63,904 nucleotides of DNA, filler included, from Octopus bimaculoides (GCF_001194135.2; 4 parts of 4 records of this genome joined end to end with filler, not necessarily neighbours in it), one strand, 5' to 3'; shown: positions 33,137-33,545, counted from the first letter of the whole stretch. Notes: a model not told the origin generated them from the sequence alone. Numbers and translations: made by a program.

Positions 33137-33545
33137 AGATAGTGCTTTGCCCGTGGCTAAGAGTTGTTTTGACTCTTATTTCTAGCAATGCTGGTACGGA
33201 CTTGCATCCTTTGTTACTTGAGTGACGATTGTACTTGTGCCATATGGTTTTAAACTGCGACTAGCCACCTTAAAGATTTATAGTTTTCACTTTATCATTT
33301 TACTGAATCAGCCACCGGTCCCTATGGTATTTTCTATAAACTAACAAGGCGAGTTAGCTTAACCGTATGCAATGGAGTAGTGCTACTGATGAGGATTGAT
33401 TCTATCCGAAATCATCGATAGTCTAACGCTCTTCCTCGCAGTAGGGAGGTTGTCTCCCTTGTCAGTCAATAGGTAGTGCTTTGCCTGTGACTAAGAGATG
33501 TTTTGACTCATATTTCTAGCAATGCCGGTGCTGATTTGCACCTTT
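33137..33545 (+). mobile_element. Retrozyme-like / Penelope pseudo-LTR-like unit, 334 nt with about 76-nt terminal redundancy
   Basis: 33137-33212 and 33471-33545 are direct repeats (10 differences in 76). They enclose a hammerhead fold. Confidence 0.65.
33374..33435 (+). ncRNA. Type I hammerhead ribozyme motif
   Basis: Stem I 33374-33385/33424-33435; CTGATGA 33386-33392; stem II GGAT-(TGATTCT)-ATCC; GAAA 33408-33411; stem III around palindromic ATCGAT; GTC cleavage triplet 33421-33423. Confidence 0.8.

What the first reader, a model, noticed from the sequence alone, without database searches (positions are those of the whole stretch)
33137..33545. Type I hammerhead ribozyme in a terminally redundant 334-nt unit: candidate cephalopod retrozyme / circRNA element
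Seen: GGAGTAGTGCTA-CTGATGA-GGAT(TGATTCT)ATCC-GAAA-TCATCGATA-GTC^-TAACGCTCTTCC. The core CUGAUGA, GAAA and GUC are intact and stem II is perfect. Stem I gives 8 Watson-Crick pairs, 2 G-U and 2 mismatches. Stem III surrounds the palindrome ATCGAT; a TC-to-CT swap at 33412-33413 would restore the perfect palindrome ACTATCGATAGT. A 6-bp hairpin (33443-33459) follows. The unit is bracketed by about 87%-identical 76-nt direct repeats 334 nt apart and has no ORF. Established: Penelope-like elements and non-LTR retrozymes (reported from corals, mussel and axolotl) carry type I hammerheads with short palindromic stem III that cleave as dimers, and 170-400 nt tandem units that yield circular RNAs. Inference: this is a monomer-plus-overlap insertion of such an element. 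It is in sense orientation within an intron of the putative host gene, so activity could cut the pre-mRNA. The weakened stem III (U-G then C-A) may attenuate this copy. I cannot tell whether the family has already been described.
Basis: partly seen in the sequence, partly recalled or inferred. Interest (0 to 1): 0.85.

Follow-up and report, generated by a model that had tools for sequence, protein, structure and literature searches.

The report
Decayed hammerhead-ribozyme retroelement copy
A 409-base non-coding insertion in a draft animal genome carries one recognisable but weakened type I hammerhead ribozyme. It looks like an old, probably inactive copy of the small "retrozyme" retroelements already known from many animals, so it is a modest new example and not a new kind of thing.

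Summary
At 33374-33435 (+) there is a type I hammerhead with an intact core (CUGAUGA / GAAAU / GUC), a perfect 4-bp helix II, a 12-position helix I (8 Watson-Crick pairs, 2 G-U, 2 mismatches) and a near-palindromic helix III. It lies in a 409-nt ORF-free element whose ends are 76-nt direct repeats, 86.8% identical and 334 nt apart.

The motif is unlikely to be chance. My descriptor expects about 7e-4 hits in this piece. A covariance model built from three experimentally validated retrozyme hammerheads ranks it first (16.2 bits, E about 0.006; next hit 7.8 bits). Rfam finds nothing, but a control showed Rfam also misses textbook-perfect microbial type I hammerheads, so that negative carries little weight.

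Best reading: an old (K2P 0.13 between the repeats) 1.22-unit copy of a non-LTR retrozyme or Penelope-associated non-autonomous element. With one ribozyme and mismatches in helices I and III, it is probably inactive and cannot release a circle by itself.

I could not test paralogues, covariation, circRNA, the cephalopod origin or the intronic location. No related sequence was reachable in any collection. Verdict: new member of a known kind, modest interest.

The parts
33137..33545 (+). Whole element: 409 nt, equal to 1.22 copies of a 334-nt unit. It is non-coding, 41% GC and sharply bounded.
   Evidence: Self-BLAST and the repeat finder. There is no residual similarity of the unit interior to either flank. 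The longest ORF is 40 aa. GC.
33137..33212 (+). Left copy of the terminal direct repeat (76 nt).
   Evidence: 86.8% identity to the right copy, 6 transitions, 3 transversions, 1 gap, K2P 0.132.
33471..33545 (+). Right copy of the terminal direct repeat (75 nt), the start of a second unit that ends before its ribozyme.
33374..33435 (+). Type I hammerhead ribozyme motif (62 nt).
   Evidence: Sequence read. It is the only descriptor hit in the piece. It is the top hit of CM R1, built from validated retrozyme hammerheads: 33378-33431, 16.2 bits, E 0.006.
33374..33385 (+). Helix I, 5' strand (GGAGUAGUGCUA).
   Evidence: Pairs with 33424-33435: 8 Watson-Crick, 2 G-U and 2 mismatches.
33386..33392 (+). 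Catalytic core box CUGAUGA (C3-A9).
   Evidence: This is the only + strand CTGATGA in the piece.
33393..33407 (+). Helix II hairpin: GGAU / loop UGAUUCU / AUCC, 4 perfect pairs including G10.1-C11.1.
33408..33410 (+). Core G12 A13 A14.
33411..33422 (+). Helix III, the near-palindrome AUCAUCGAUAGU. Pairs are A15.1-U16.1, U.G, C.A mismatch, A-U, U-A, C-G. The inner part is the palindrome AUCGAU.
   Evidence: The self-duplex is -5.9 kcal/mol as it stands, and -12.3 or -15.7 after one transition.
33423..33424 (+). Predicted self-cleavage site, after C17 (33423^33424).
   Evidence: This follows from the hammerhead numbering applied to the sequence. It was not tested experimentally.
33424..33435 (+). 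Helix I, 3' strand (UAACGCUCUUCC).
33443..33459 (+). 6-bp hairpin downstream of the ribozyme (AGGGAG / GUUGU / CUCCCU).
   Evidence: It is also present in the circular folds of the unit.

Best explanation
This is an old, solitary genomic copy of a small non-autonomous retroelement that carries a type I hammerhead ribozyme. It belongs to the metazoan non-LTR retrozyme type, thought to be mobilised by Penelope-like element reverse transcriptase. The copy is 1.22 units of 334 nt.

How active family members work (established in the cited papers, inferred for this family): tandem or multimeric transcripts are cut by the hammerhead after C17. The unit-length RNA, with 5'-OH and 2',3'-cyclic phosphate ends, is ligated into a roughly 334-nt circle. 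A retroelement reverse transcriptase then copies the circle or multimer for more than one turn.

That mechanism would give an insertion whose ends are redundant and do not coincide with the cleavage site. This is the pattern seen here. The element starts 48 nt after one predicted cut position and ends 122 nt after the next.

This particular copy has since decayed neutrally, at about 6-7% per site. It keeps the 14 core nucleotides and helix II. It has a C.A mismatch in helix III and C.A and U.C mismatches in helix I.

It contains only one ribozyme. It therefore cannot excise a monomer or form the cis dimer that a short palindromic helix III usually needs. It is most likely catalytically dead or very weak.

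Shown: motif, architecture, statistics and decay. Inferred: retrozyme origin, rolling-circle or multimer templating, inactivity.
For: - The motif and repeats are confirmed.
- It is the only descriptor hit in the piece.
- Chance expectation is 7e-4 per piece. With the observed helix I and III quality it falls to about 0.3-5 per 2.7-Gb genome.
- CM R1 was built only from the coral Amil224, mussel Mg353 and axolotl Ax353 ribozymes (sequences from the supplement of PMC7229834). It ranks the motif first in the piece at 16.2 bits, E 0.006, against 7.8 bits for the runner-up. The same model scores genuine microbial hammerheads at 14-34 bits.
- The core fits the published consensus CUGANGA/GAAAY/RUH.
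- The 4-bp helix II, helix I of at least 6 bp and palindromic helix III match the canonical metazoan type I architecture (PMC4209133). The validated examples have A-CGCGCG-U and A-CAGUACUG-U in helix III.
- Unit size (334 nt), 41% GC and lack of an ORF fit the published retrozyme definition.
- More-than-unit insertions are what circle or multimer templating predicts (PMC4209133).
- The repeat divergence is transition-rich (6 transitions to 3 transversions). It predicts about 4 substitutions in the 62-nt ribozyme, in line with the 3 non-pairs seen. The chance that all 14 core bases survive is about 0.38, so no selection is needed.
Against: - No second copy of the unit exists in the 17.7 kb available.
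- No relative was found in any reachable collection. Family membership and covariation are therefore untested.
- Rfam hammerhead models do not match even at E<=10. This is weakened by the control.
- The CM score is at the low end for real hammerheads.
- Nearest-neighbour energy of the hammerhead fold is only -3.5 kcal/mol, against -15.3 for a competing hairpin that sequesters UGAUGA. Validated mussel and coral ribozymes show the same kind of gap: -6.7 vs -14.1 and -12.2 vs -15.8.
- No target-site duplication.
- No reverse transcriptase or GIY-YIG remnant nearby.
- The circular fold of the unit is only mildly better than shuffles (z -2.2; controls range from -2.05 to +1.1).
- Local direct repeats are common in this piece.
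Confidence: 0.68

Rival explanations
1. The element is a 5'-truncated terminal fragment (pseudo-LTR region) of an autonomous Penelope-like element and not a dedicated small retrozyme. Penelope-like elements carry hammerheads in their terminal repeats and typically insert as partial tandems, which would also give terminal redundancy.
For: Penelope-like elements carry type I hammerheads in their pseudo-LTRs. Most genomic motifs occur singly, "probably related to truncated PLEs", and the elements insert as partial tandems (PMC4209133; PMC8557442). A 2026 preprint finds retrozymes to be sister to PLE pseudo-LTRs, so the two readings overlap.
Against: - The ribozyme lacks the traits of metazoan PLE minimal hammerheads. 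Those are a 6-8 bp helix II, an unpaired base between A9 and G10.1, and a 4-5 bp helix I. Here helix II is 4 bp, there is no extra base, and helix I is long.
- No reverse transcriptase or GIY-YIG remnant appears in the six-frame Pfam scan of the contig.
- The repeated unit is only 334 nt, and the ribozyme lies outside the duplicated 76 nt.
Confidence: 0.15
2. This is a chance hammerhead-like string inside an ordinary local segmental duplication. There is no ribozyme ancestry.
For: - The relaxed descriptor expects about 100 chance hits in a genome of a few Gb.
- No Rfam hit.
- No paralogue was found.
- Helices I and III are imperfect.
- The predicted MFE fold is a different hairpin.
- Local direct repeats cover about 12% of the piece.
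Against: - The expectation in this piece is 7e-4. With the observed helix I (10/12) and helix III quality it is 0.3-5 per whole genome.
- An independent CM from validated ribozymes gives E 0.006, with a clear gap to the noise.
- The Y15.2-R16.2, G10.1-C11.1 and palindromic helix III details, which were not part of my descriptor, all fit published conserved features.
- Placement in a more-than-unit 334-nt AT-rich ORF-free element matches the known carrier.
Confidence: 0.13
3. This is an exapted, functional intronic hammerhead that cleaves the host pre-mRNA in cis, by analogy with conserved intronic hammerheads of amniotes.
For: The core is intact.
Against: - No exon or gene could be identified in the piece.
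- The mismatches in helices I and III and the neutral-looking decay of the flanking repeats argue against purifying selection.
- Survival of the intact core has probability of about 0.38 without selection.
Confidence: 0.04

Closest known systems
Metazoan non-LTR retrozymes (Acropora millepora about 224 nt, Mytilus galloprovincialis about 353 nt, Ambystoma mexicanum 331/353 nt; Cervera and de la Pena 2020, PMC7229834)
   Same: - Type I hammerhead with a 4-bp helix II, helix I of at least 6 bp and a short palindromic helix III.
- Unit of a few hundred nt (334 here) with low GC (41%) and no ORF.
- More-than-unit genomic arrangement.
- The sequence outside the ribozyme is species-specific: there is no similarity to the mussel or coral units.
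   Different: - Only 1.22 units and a single ribozyme, not arrays from dimers up to 62-mers.
- Helices I and III carry mismatches.
- Copy number, transcription and circRNA are unknown.
- No loop 1-loop 2 contact can be recognised.
Minimal hammerheads in pseudo-LTRs of Penelope-like elements (Cervera and de la Pena 2014, PMC4209133)
   Same: - Type I topology.
- G10.1-C11.1 pair.
- Palindromic 15.2-16.2 and loop 3, implying action as a dimer.
- Frequent occurrence as single, dispersed, degenerate copies.
- Partial-tandem insertion architecture.
   Different: - PLE minimal hammerheads have a 6-8 bp helix II, an extra unpaired base after A9 and a 4-5 bp helix I. This motif has none of these.
- No reverse transcriptase or GIY-YIG ORF is nearby.
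Classical repeat-borne type I hammerheads: newt satellite 2 (about 330 bp), Schistosoma Sm-alpha, cave-cricket pDo500 (as cited in PMC4209133 and PMC7229834)
   Same: A hammerhead embedded in a repeat unit of about 330 bp. Helix III is weak and needs a dimer in newts and salamanders.
   Different: Those are high-copy tandem satellites or SINE-like families with demonstrated transcripts and cleavage. Here there is one decayed copy with no expression data.
Microbial and phage type I hammerheads found in the metagenome scan (L001-L120)
   Same: Identical core and the same GGAU/AUCC helix II.
   Different: They have a long, stable helix III hairpin and a 6-bp helix I, and they share no flanking similarity. 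The resemblance is convergent use of the same helix II, not homology.

Membership tests
Hammerhead ribozyme, type I | Conserved catalytic core CUGANGA / GAAA(Y) / (R)UH in the right order | tested here: met
   CUGAUGA 33386-33392, GAAAU 33408-33412, GUC 33421-33423. The consensus wording comes from the supplement of PMC7229834.
Hammerhead ribozyme, type I | Three helices around the core, with helix I open and helices II and III closed by loops | tested here: met
   - Helix II: 4 of 4 pairs.
- Helix I: 10 of 12 positions paired (5 of the 6 next to the core).
- Helix III: 5 of 6 stacked positions paired, or 2 bp as a monomer hairpin.
- It is imperfect: C.A at 2.3/1.3 and C.A at 15.3/16.3.
Hammerhead ribozyme, type I | Match to a curated covariance model (Rfam hammerhead families) at gathering score | tested here: not met
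   No hit at gathering, nor at E<=10 on 501 nt or 91 nt. Control: five loci with flawless microbial type I hammerheads also give no gathering hit. One gives only RAGATH-1-hammerhead at 20.5 bits against a 56.3-bit cut-off. The test is therefore insensitive.
Hammerhead ribozyme, type I | Match to a covariance model built from experimentally validated retrozyme hammerheads | tested here: met
   Model R1 (coral, mussel, axolotl). Top hit in the piece is 33378-33431 +, 16.2 bits, E 0.006, with the next hit at 7.8 bits. The score is at the low end of the 14-34 bits seen for real hammerheads. E-values are rough.
Hammerhead ribozyme, type I | Loop 1-loop 2 tertiary contact | tested here: inconclusive
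   Helix I has only a 1x1 U.C interruption at position 8, and loop 2 is UGAUUCU. No conserved contact nucleotides can be recognised, and no 3D test is available.
Hammerhead ribozyme, type I | Compensatory changes in the helices among homologues | not testable with these tools
   No homologue was obtainable: the piece, metagenomes, prokaryote genomes, viral contigs, six-frame protein search.
Hammerhead ribozyme, type I | Mg-dependent self-cleavage after position 17 | not testable with these tools
   This needs an experiment. In silico, the hammerhead fold is -3.5 against an MFE of -15.3 kcal/mol. Validated ribozymes show similar gaps.
Metazoan non-LTR retrozyme | Tandem repeats of 150-450 bp, each unit with a type I hammerhead (dimer or more) | tested here: not met
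   The unit size fits (334 nt), but only 1.22 units and one ribozyme are present, and the flanks hold no further unit. It fits the 'monomer derivative' category of the 2026 preprint.
Metazoan non-LTR retrozyme | Low GC (<45-50%), non-coding, no LTR/PBS/PPT | tested here: met
   GC is 41%. The longest ORF is 40 aa. There are no Pfam domains.
Metazoan non-LTR retrozyme | Multi-copy, species-specific family in the genome | not testable with these tools
   Only 17.7 kb of the genome is available, with no second copy in it. No eukaryote genome collection is searchable at the DNA level.
Metazoan non-LTR retrozyme | Expression as unit-length linear and circular RNA with a compact, highly paired fold | tested here: inconclusive
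   Expression is not testable. The circular MFE is -87 kcal/mol with 63% paired and z = -2.2 against dinucleotide shuffles. Flanking controls range from -2.05 to +1.1.
Penelope-like element minimal hammerhead / pseudo-LTR | Helix II of 6-8 bp, an unpaired base between A9 and G10.1, and a helix I of 4-5 bp | tested here: not met
   Helix II is 4 bp, there is no extra base, and helix I has 12 positions. The definition is from PMC4209133.
Penelope-like element minimal hammerhead / pseudo-LTR | Located in direct repeats flanking a reverse transcriptase + GIY-YIG ORF | tested here: not met
   The six-frame Pfam scan of contig 31543-33868 shows no such domain, and none appears in the 10 longest ORFs of the piece. 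The ribozyme lies outside the duplicated 76 nt. An assembly gap starts at 33869.

The most novel reading that the evidence does not exclude
The copy is a relic of a so-far undescribed retrozyme family of this (possibly cephalopod) genome. Younger members of the family would still stand in tandem arrays, self-cleave and accumulate as circRNAs of about 334 nt. Some intronic sense copies would cut host pre-mRNAs.
Probability: 0.25. Interest if true: 0.45.

Novelty: new member of a known kind. Interest (0 to 1): 0.3.

Why it matters
If the family is confirmed genome-wide, it would add another lineage to the animals known to carry hammerhead retrozymes. If the piece is indeed from a cephalopod, that is a lineage for which the open literature I could search reports none. 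It would also give a ready-made, naturally circularising RNA scaffold from that lineage.

This single copy is a neutral fossil. Its main use is as a seed sequence for finding the family. It is not itself a functional element.

Tried and rejected
1. Rfam scans at gathering and at E<=10 gave no hammerhead. I rejected this as decisive after a control: flawless microbial type I hammerheads are also missed.

2. A metagenome scan with CTGATGAGGATN{5,9}ATCCGAAA gave 120+ loci. All were unrelated microbial or phage hammerheads or chance matches. None shared flanks with the unit.

3. Scans of prokaryote-genome and viral contigs with unit and ribozyme patterns gave nothing.

4. A six-frame chimeric protein search of the unit, meant to catch spurious ORFs called on paralogues, gave nothing.

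5. I tried to identify taxon, host gene or transposon context. The attempts were Pfam on the long ORFs and on the six-frame contig, a chimeric search of 19 open stretches, and exact look-ups of four window ORFs. All gave nothing. ARAGORN found no tRNA.

6. Target-site duplication search: the best flank alignment was no better than shuffles, with 161 of 500 reaching it. An apparent 30-nt 'tail' plus duplication that I saw by eye was rejected on this basis.

7. I looked for a further diverged unit in the flanks and found none.

8. Similarity to the mussel and coral retrozymes outside the core: none.

9. Thermodynamic argument against activity: the hammerhead fold is 12 kcal/mol above the MFE. 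I kept this only as weak evidence, because validated ribozymes behave similarly. The competing hairpin is not unusually stable (z -0.95).

10. A four-sequence alignment including axolotl Ax330 was misaligned by MAFFT, so I dropped it for a three-sequence model.

11. A literature search for the SINE-like repeat sequence gave nothing.

Full report
**1. What is there**

The piece (31543-51186) is draft eukaryotic scaffold. It has five N gaps, about 38% GC, many TA/CA microsatellites and no recognisable coding sequence.

At 33374-33435 on the + strand the sequence reads GGAGUAGUGCUA-CUGAUGA-GGAU(UGAUUCU)AUCC-GAA-AUCAUCGAUAGU-C^UAACGCUCUUCC (coordinates fixed).

- the core is intact;
- helix II has 4 perfect pairs including G10.1-C11.1;
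- helix I has 8 Watson-Crick pairs, 2 G-U and 2 mismatches;
- helix III is built round the palindrome AUCGAU;
- the predicted cut is after C33423;
- a 6-bp hairpin lies at 33443-33459.

The element is bounded by direct repeats at 33137-33212 and 33471-33545, 334 nt apart. They show 66 matches, 6 transitions, 3 transversions and 1 gap, which is 86.8% identity and K2P 0.132. No ORF longer than 40 aa touches it. Neither flank continues the unit.

**2. Is it more than chance?**

A type I descriptor was used with these terms: CUGANGA, helix II of at least 4 bp, GAAA, U-H, and at least 5 of 6 helix I pairs. It finds one hit in the piece, this one.

Conditional simulation with the piece's base composition gives:

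| Criteria | Rate per base-strand | Expected in the piece | Expected in 2.7 Gb |
|---|---|---|---|
| Relaxed descriptor | 2e-8 | 7e-4 | about 105 |
| Plus observed 10/12 helix I pairs | 1e-9 | 3.5e-5 | about 5 |
| Plus observed helix III (at most one non-pair in six) | 6e-11 | 2e-6 | about 0.3 |

A first-order Markov simulation of 40 Mb agrees. The last two criteria were chosen after seeing the motif, so they overstate the significance.

As an independent test I took three experimentally validated retrozyme ribozymes from the supplement of Cervera and de la Pena 2020: coral Amil224, mussel Mg353 and axolotl Ax353. I aligned them, built a covariance model and searched the piece with filters off. 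The motif is the top hit at 16.2 bits, E about 0.006, and the next hit has 7.8 bits. The same model scores genuine microbial hammerheads at 14-34 bits. The candidate is therefore a weak but real match.

**3. The Rfam negative**

No Rfam hammerhead family matches at gathering score. None matches at E<=10 either, even when only 91 nt are given.

I ran a control with five metagenome loci carrying flawless type I hammerheads. These have a perfect core, a 6-bp helix I, a 4-5 bp helix II and a 6-9 bp helix III. They give no gathering hit either. One of them reaches only 20.5 bits, on RAGATH-1-hammerhead. The Rfam result therefore says little.

**4. Which kind of hammerhead**

The published canonical metazoan type I architecture has a helix I of about 6 bp, a helix II of 4 bp, and a helix III of 1-2 bp capped by a small palindromic loop (PMC4209133). 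The validated retrozyme ribozymes have A-CGCGCG-U and A-CAGUACUG-U as helix III. The candidate has A-UCAUCGAUAG-U.

The minimal hammerheads of metazoan Penelope-like elements differ. They have a 6-8 bp helix II, an extra base after A9 and a 4-5 bp helix I. None of those traits is present here. The motif is thus of the canonical, retrozyme type.

The carrier also fits the definition of metazoan non-LTR retrozymes (PMC7229834). It has a 334-nt unit, 41% GC, no ORF and more-than-unit length. The exception is that only 1.22 units and one ribozyme are present. This corresponds to the 'monomer' derivatives counted in the 2026 preprint on vertebrate retrozymes.

**5. State of this copy**

Suppose the two repeat copies were identical at insertion. 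Each has then taken about 6.6% substitutions, mostly transitions. That predicts about 4 changes in the 62-nt ribozyme. Three non-pairs are seen. The chance that all 14 core bases survive is about 0.38, so the intact core needs no selection.

Two of the three non-pairs can each be undone by one transition:

- C.A in helix I, by C33383U or A33426G;
- C.A in helix III, by C33413U or A33420G.

A single change restores a 4-bp helix III with a UCGA loop. It raises the helix III self-duplex from -5.9 to -12.3 or -15.7 kcal/mol.

The nearest-neighbour energy of the hammerhead fold is -3.5 kcal/mol. A competing hairpin that pairs UGAUGA with UCAUCG has -15.3 kcal/mol. The mussel and coral ribozymes show similar, smaller gaps, so this is only weak evidence. 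The competing hairpin is not unusually stable either (z -0.95).

More telling is that the locus holds a single ribozyme. It cannot form a cis dimer and cannot release a unit-length RNA.

**6. Mechanism**

The element begins 48 nt after one predicted cut position and ends 122 nt after the next. Its ends therefore do not coincide with the processing site. That is what is expected if reverse transcription ran more than once round a circular RNA or along a multimeric one. This was proposed for Penelope-like elements and retrozymes (PMC4209133; PMC7229834).

This step is inferred. I found no target-site duplication and no reverse transcriptase remnant nearby. The unit as a circle folds only mildly better than shuffles (z -2.2).

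**7. What could not be tested**

- No second copy exists in the piece.
- None of the reachable collections holds a relative.
- The taxon could not be established. The only hint is a SINE-like repeat present three times, which I recall from memory as the abundant octopus SINE. A literature search for its sequence found nothing.
- Searches of the open literature found no report linking hammerheads or retrozymes to cephalopods. Retrozymes are, however, reported as widespread 'from molluscs to arthropods' and species-specific in sequence.

**8. Verdict**

The most likely reading, about 0.68, is a decayed and probably inactive monomer-plus-overlap copy of a hammerhead-bearing non-autonomous retroelement of the retrozyme type.

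The rivals are:

- a truncated Penelope pseudo-LTR (0.15);
- chance (0.13);
- an exapted intronic ribozyme (0.04).

It is a new member of a known kind and of modest interest.

Noticed in passing
window 34844-35024, 38271-38452, 43964-44155 (+ strand): There are three copies (82-87% identical) of a SINE-like repeat of about 180 nt. It has a B-box-like GGTTCCGGGTTTAGTCC, and each copy is followed by (TA)n/(TG)n microsatellites. From memory only, it resembles the very abundant octopus tRNA-derived SINE. It is the only hint of the taxon. ARAGORN finds no tRNA.
   Followed up: partly
window 48907-49007 and 49137-49237: This is another short-range direct repeat (101 nt, 83% identical, spacing 230), forming a 1.4-unit structure. 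Neither the descriptor nor model R1 finds a hammerhead-like motif there.
   Followed up: partly
window 35996-36157 and 37165-37489: Two copies (81-89% identical) of an unidentified repeat lie about 1.2-1.3 kb apart. Local direct-repeat structures together cover about 12% of the piece.
   Followed up: no
metagenome loci L001-L120 (e.g. L023, L003, L019, L038, L033 246-320): - The scan for the helix II pattern pulled out over a hundred well-formed microbial or phage type I hammerheads. They have a GGAU/AUCC helix II, a long helix III and a 6-bp helix I.
- Several contigs hold 5-7 of them.
- None of the five tested reaches an Rfam gathering score. L033 matches only RAGATH-1-hammerhead, at 20.5 bits.
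   Followed up: partly
window 32309-32379: An (AAC)n microsatellite of about 24 units produces spurious poly-Q Pfam hits (TFIIA, DUF4834) in six-frame translation.
   Followed up: yes
window 33869-34750, 40971-41085, 42830-42927, 45612-46117, 46647-47011: These are assembly gaps (runs of N). The contig that holds the element is only 2.3 kb (31543-33868), so anything downstream of 33868 is unknown.
   Followed up: yes
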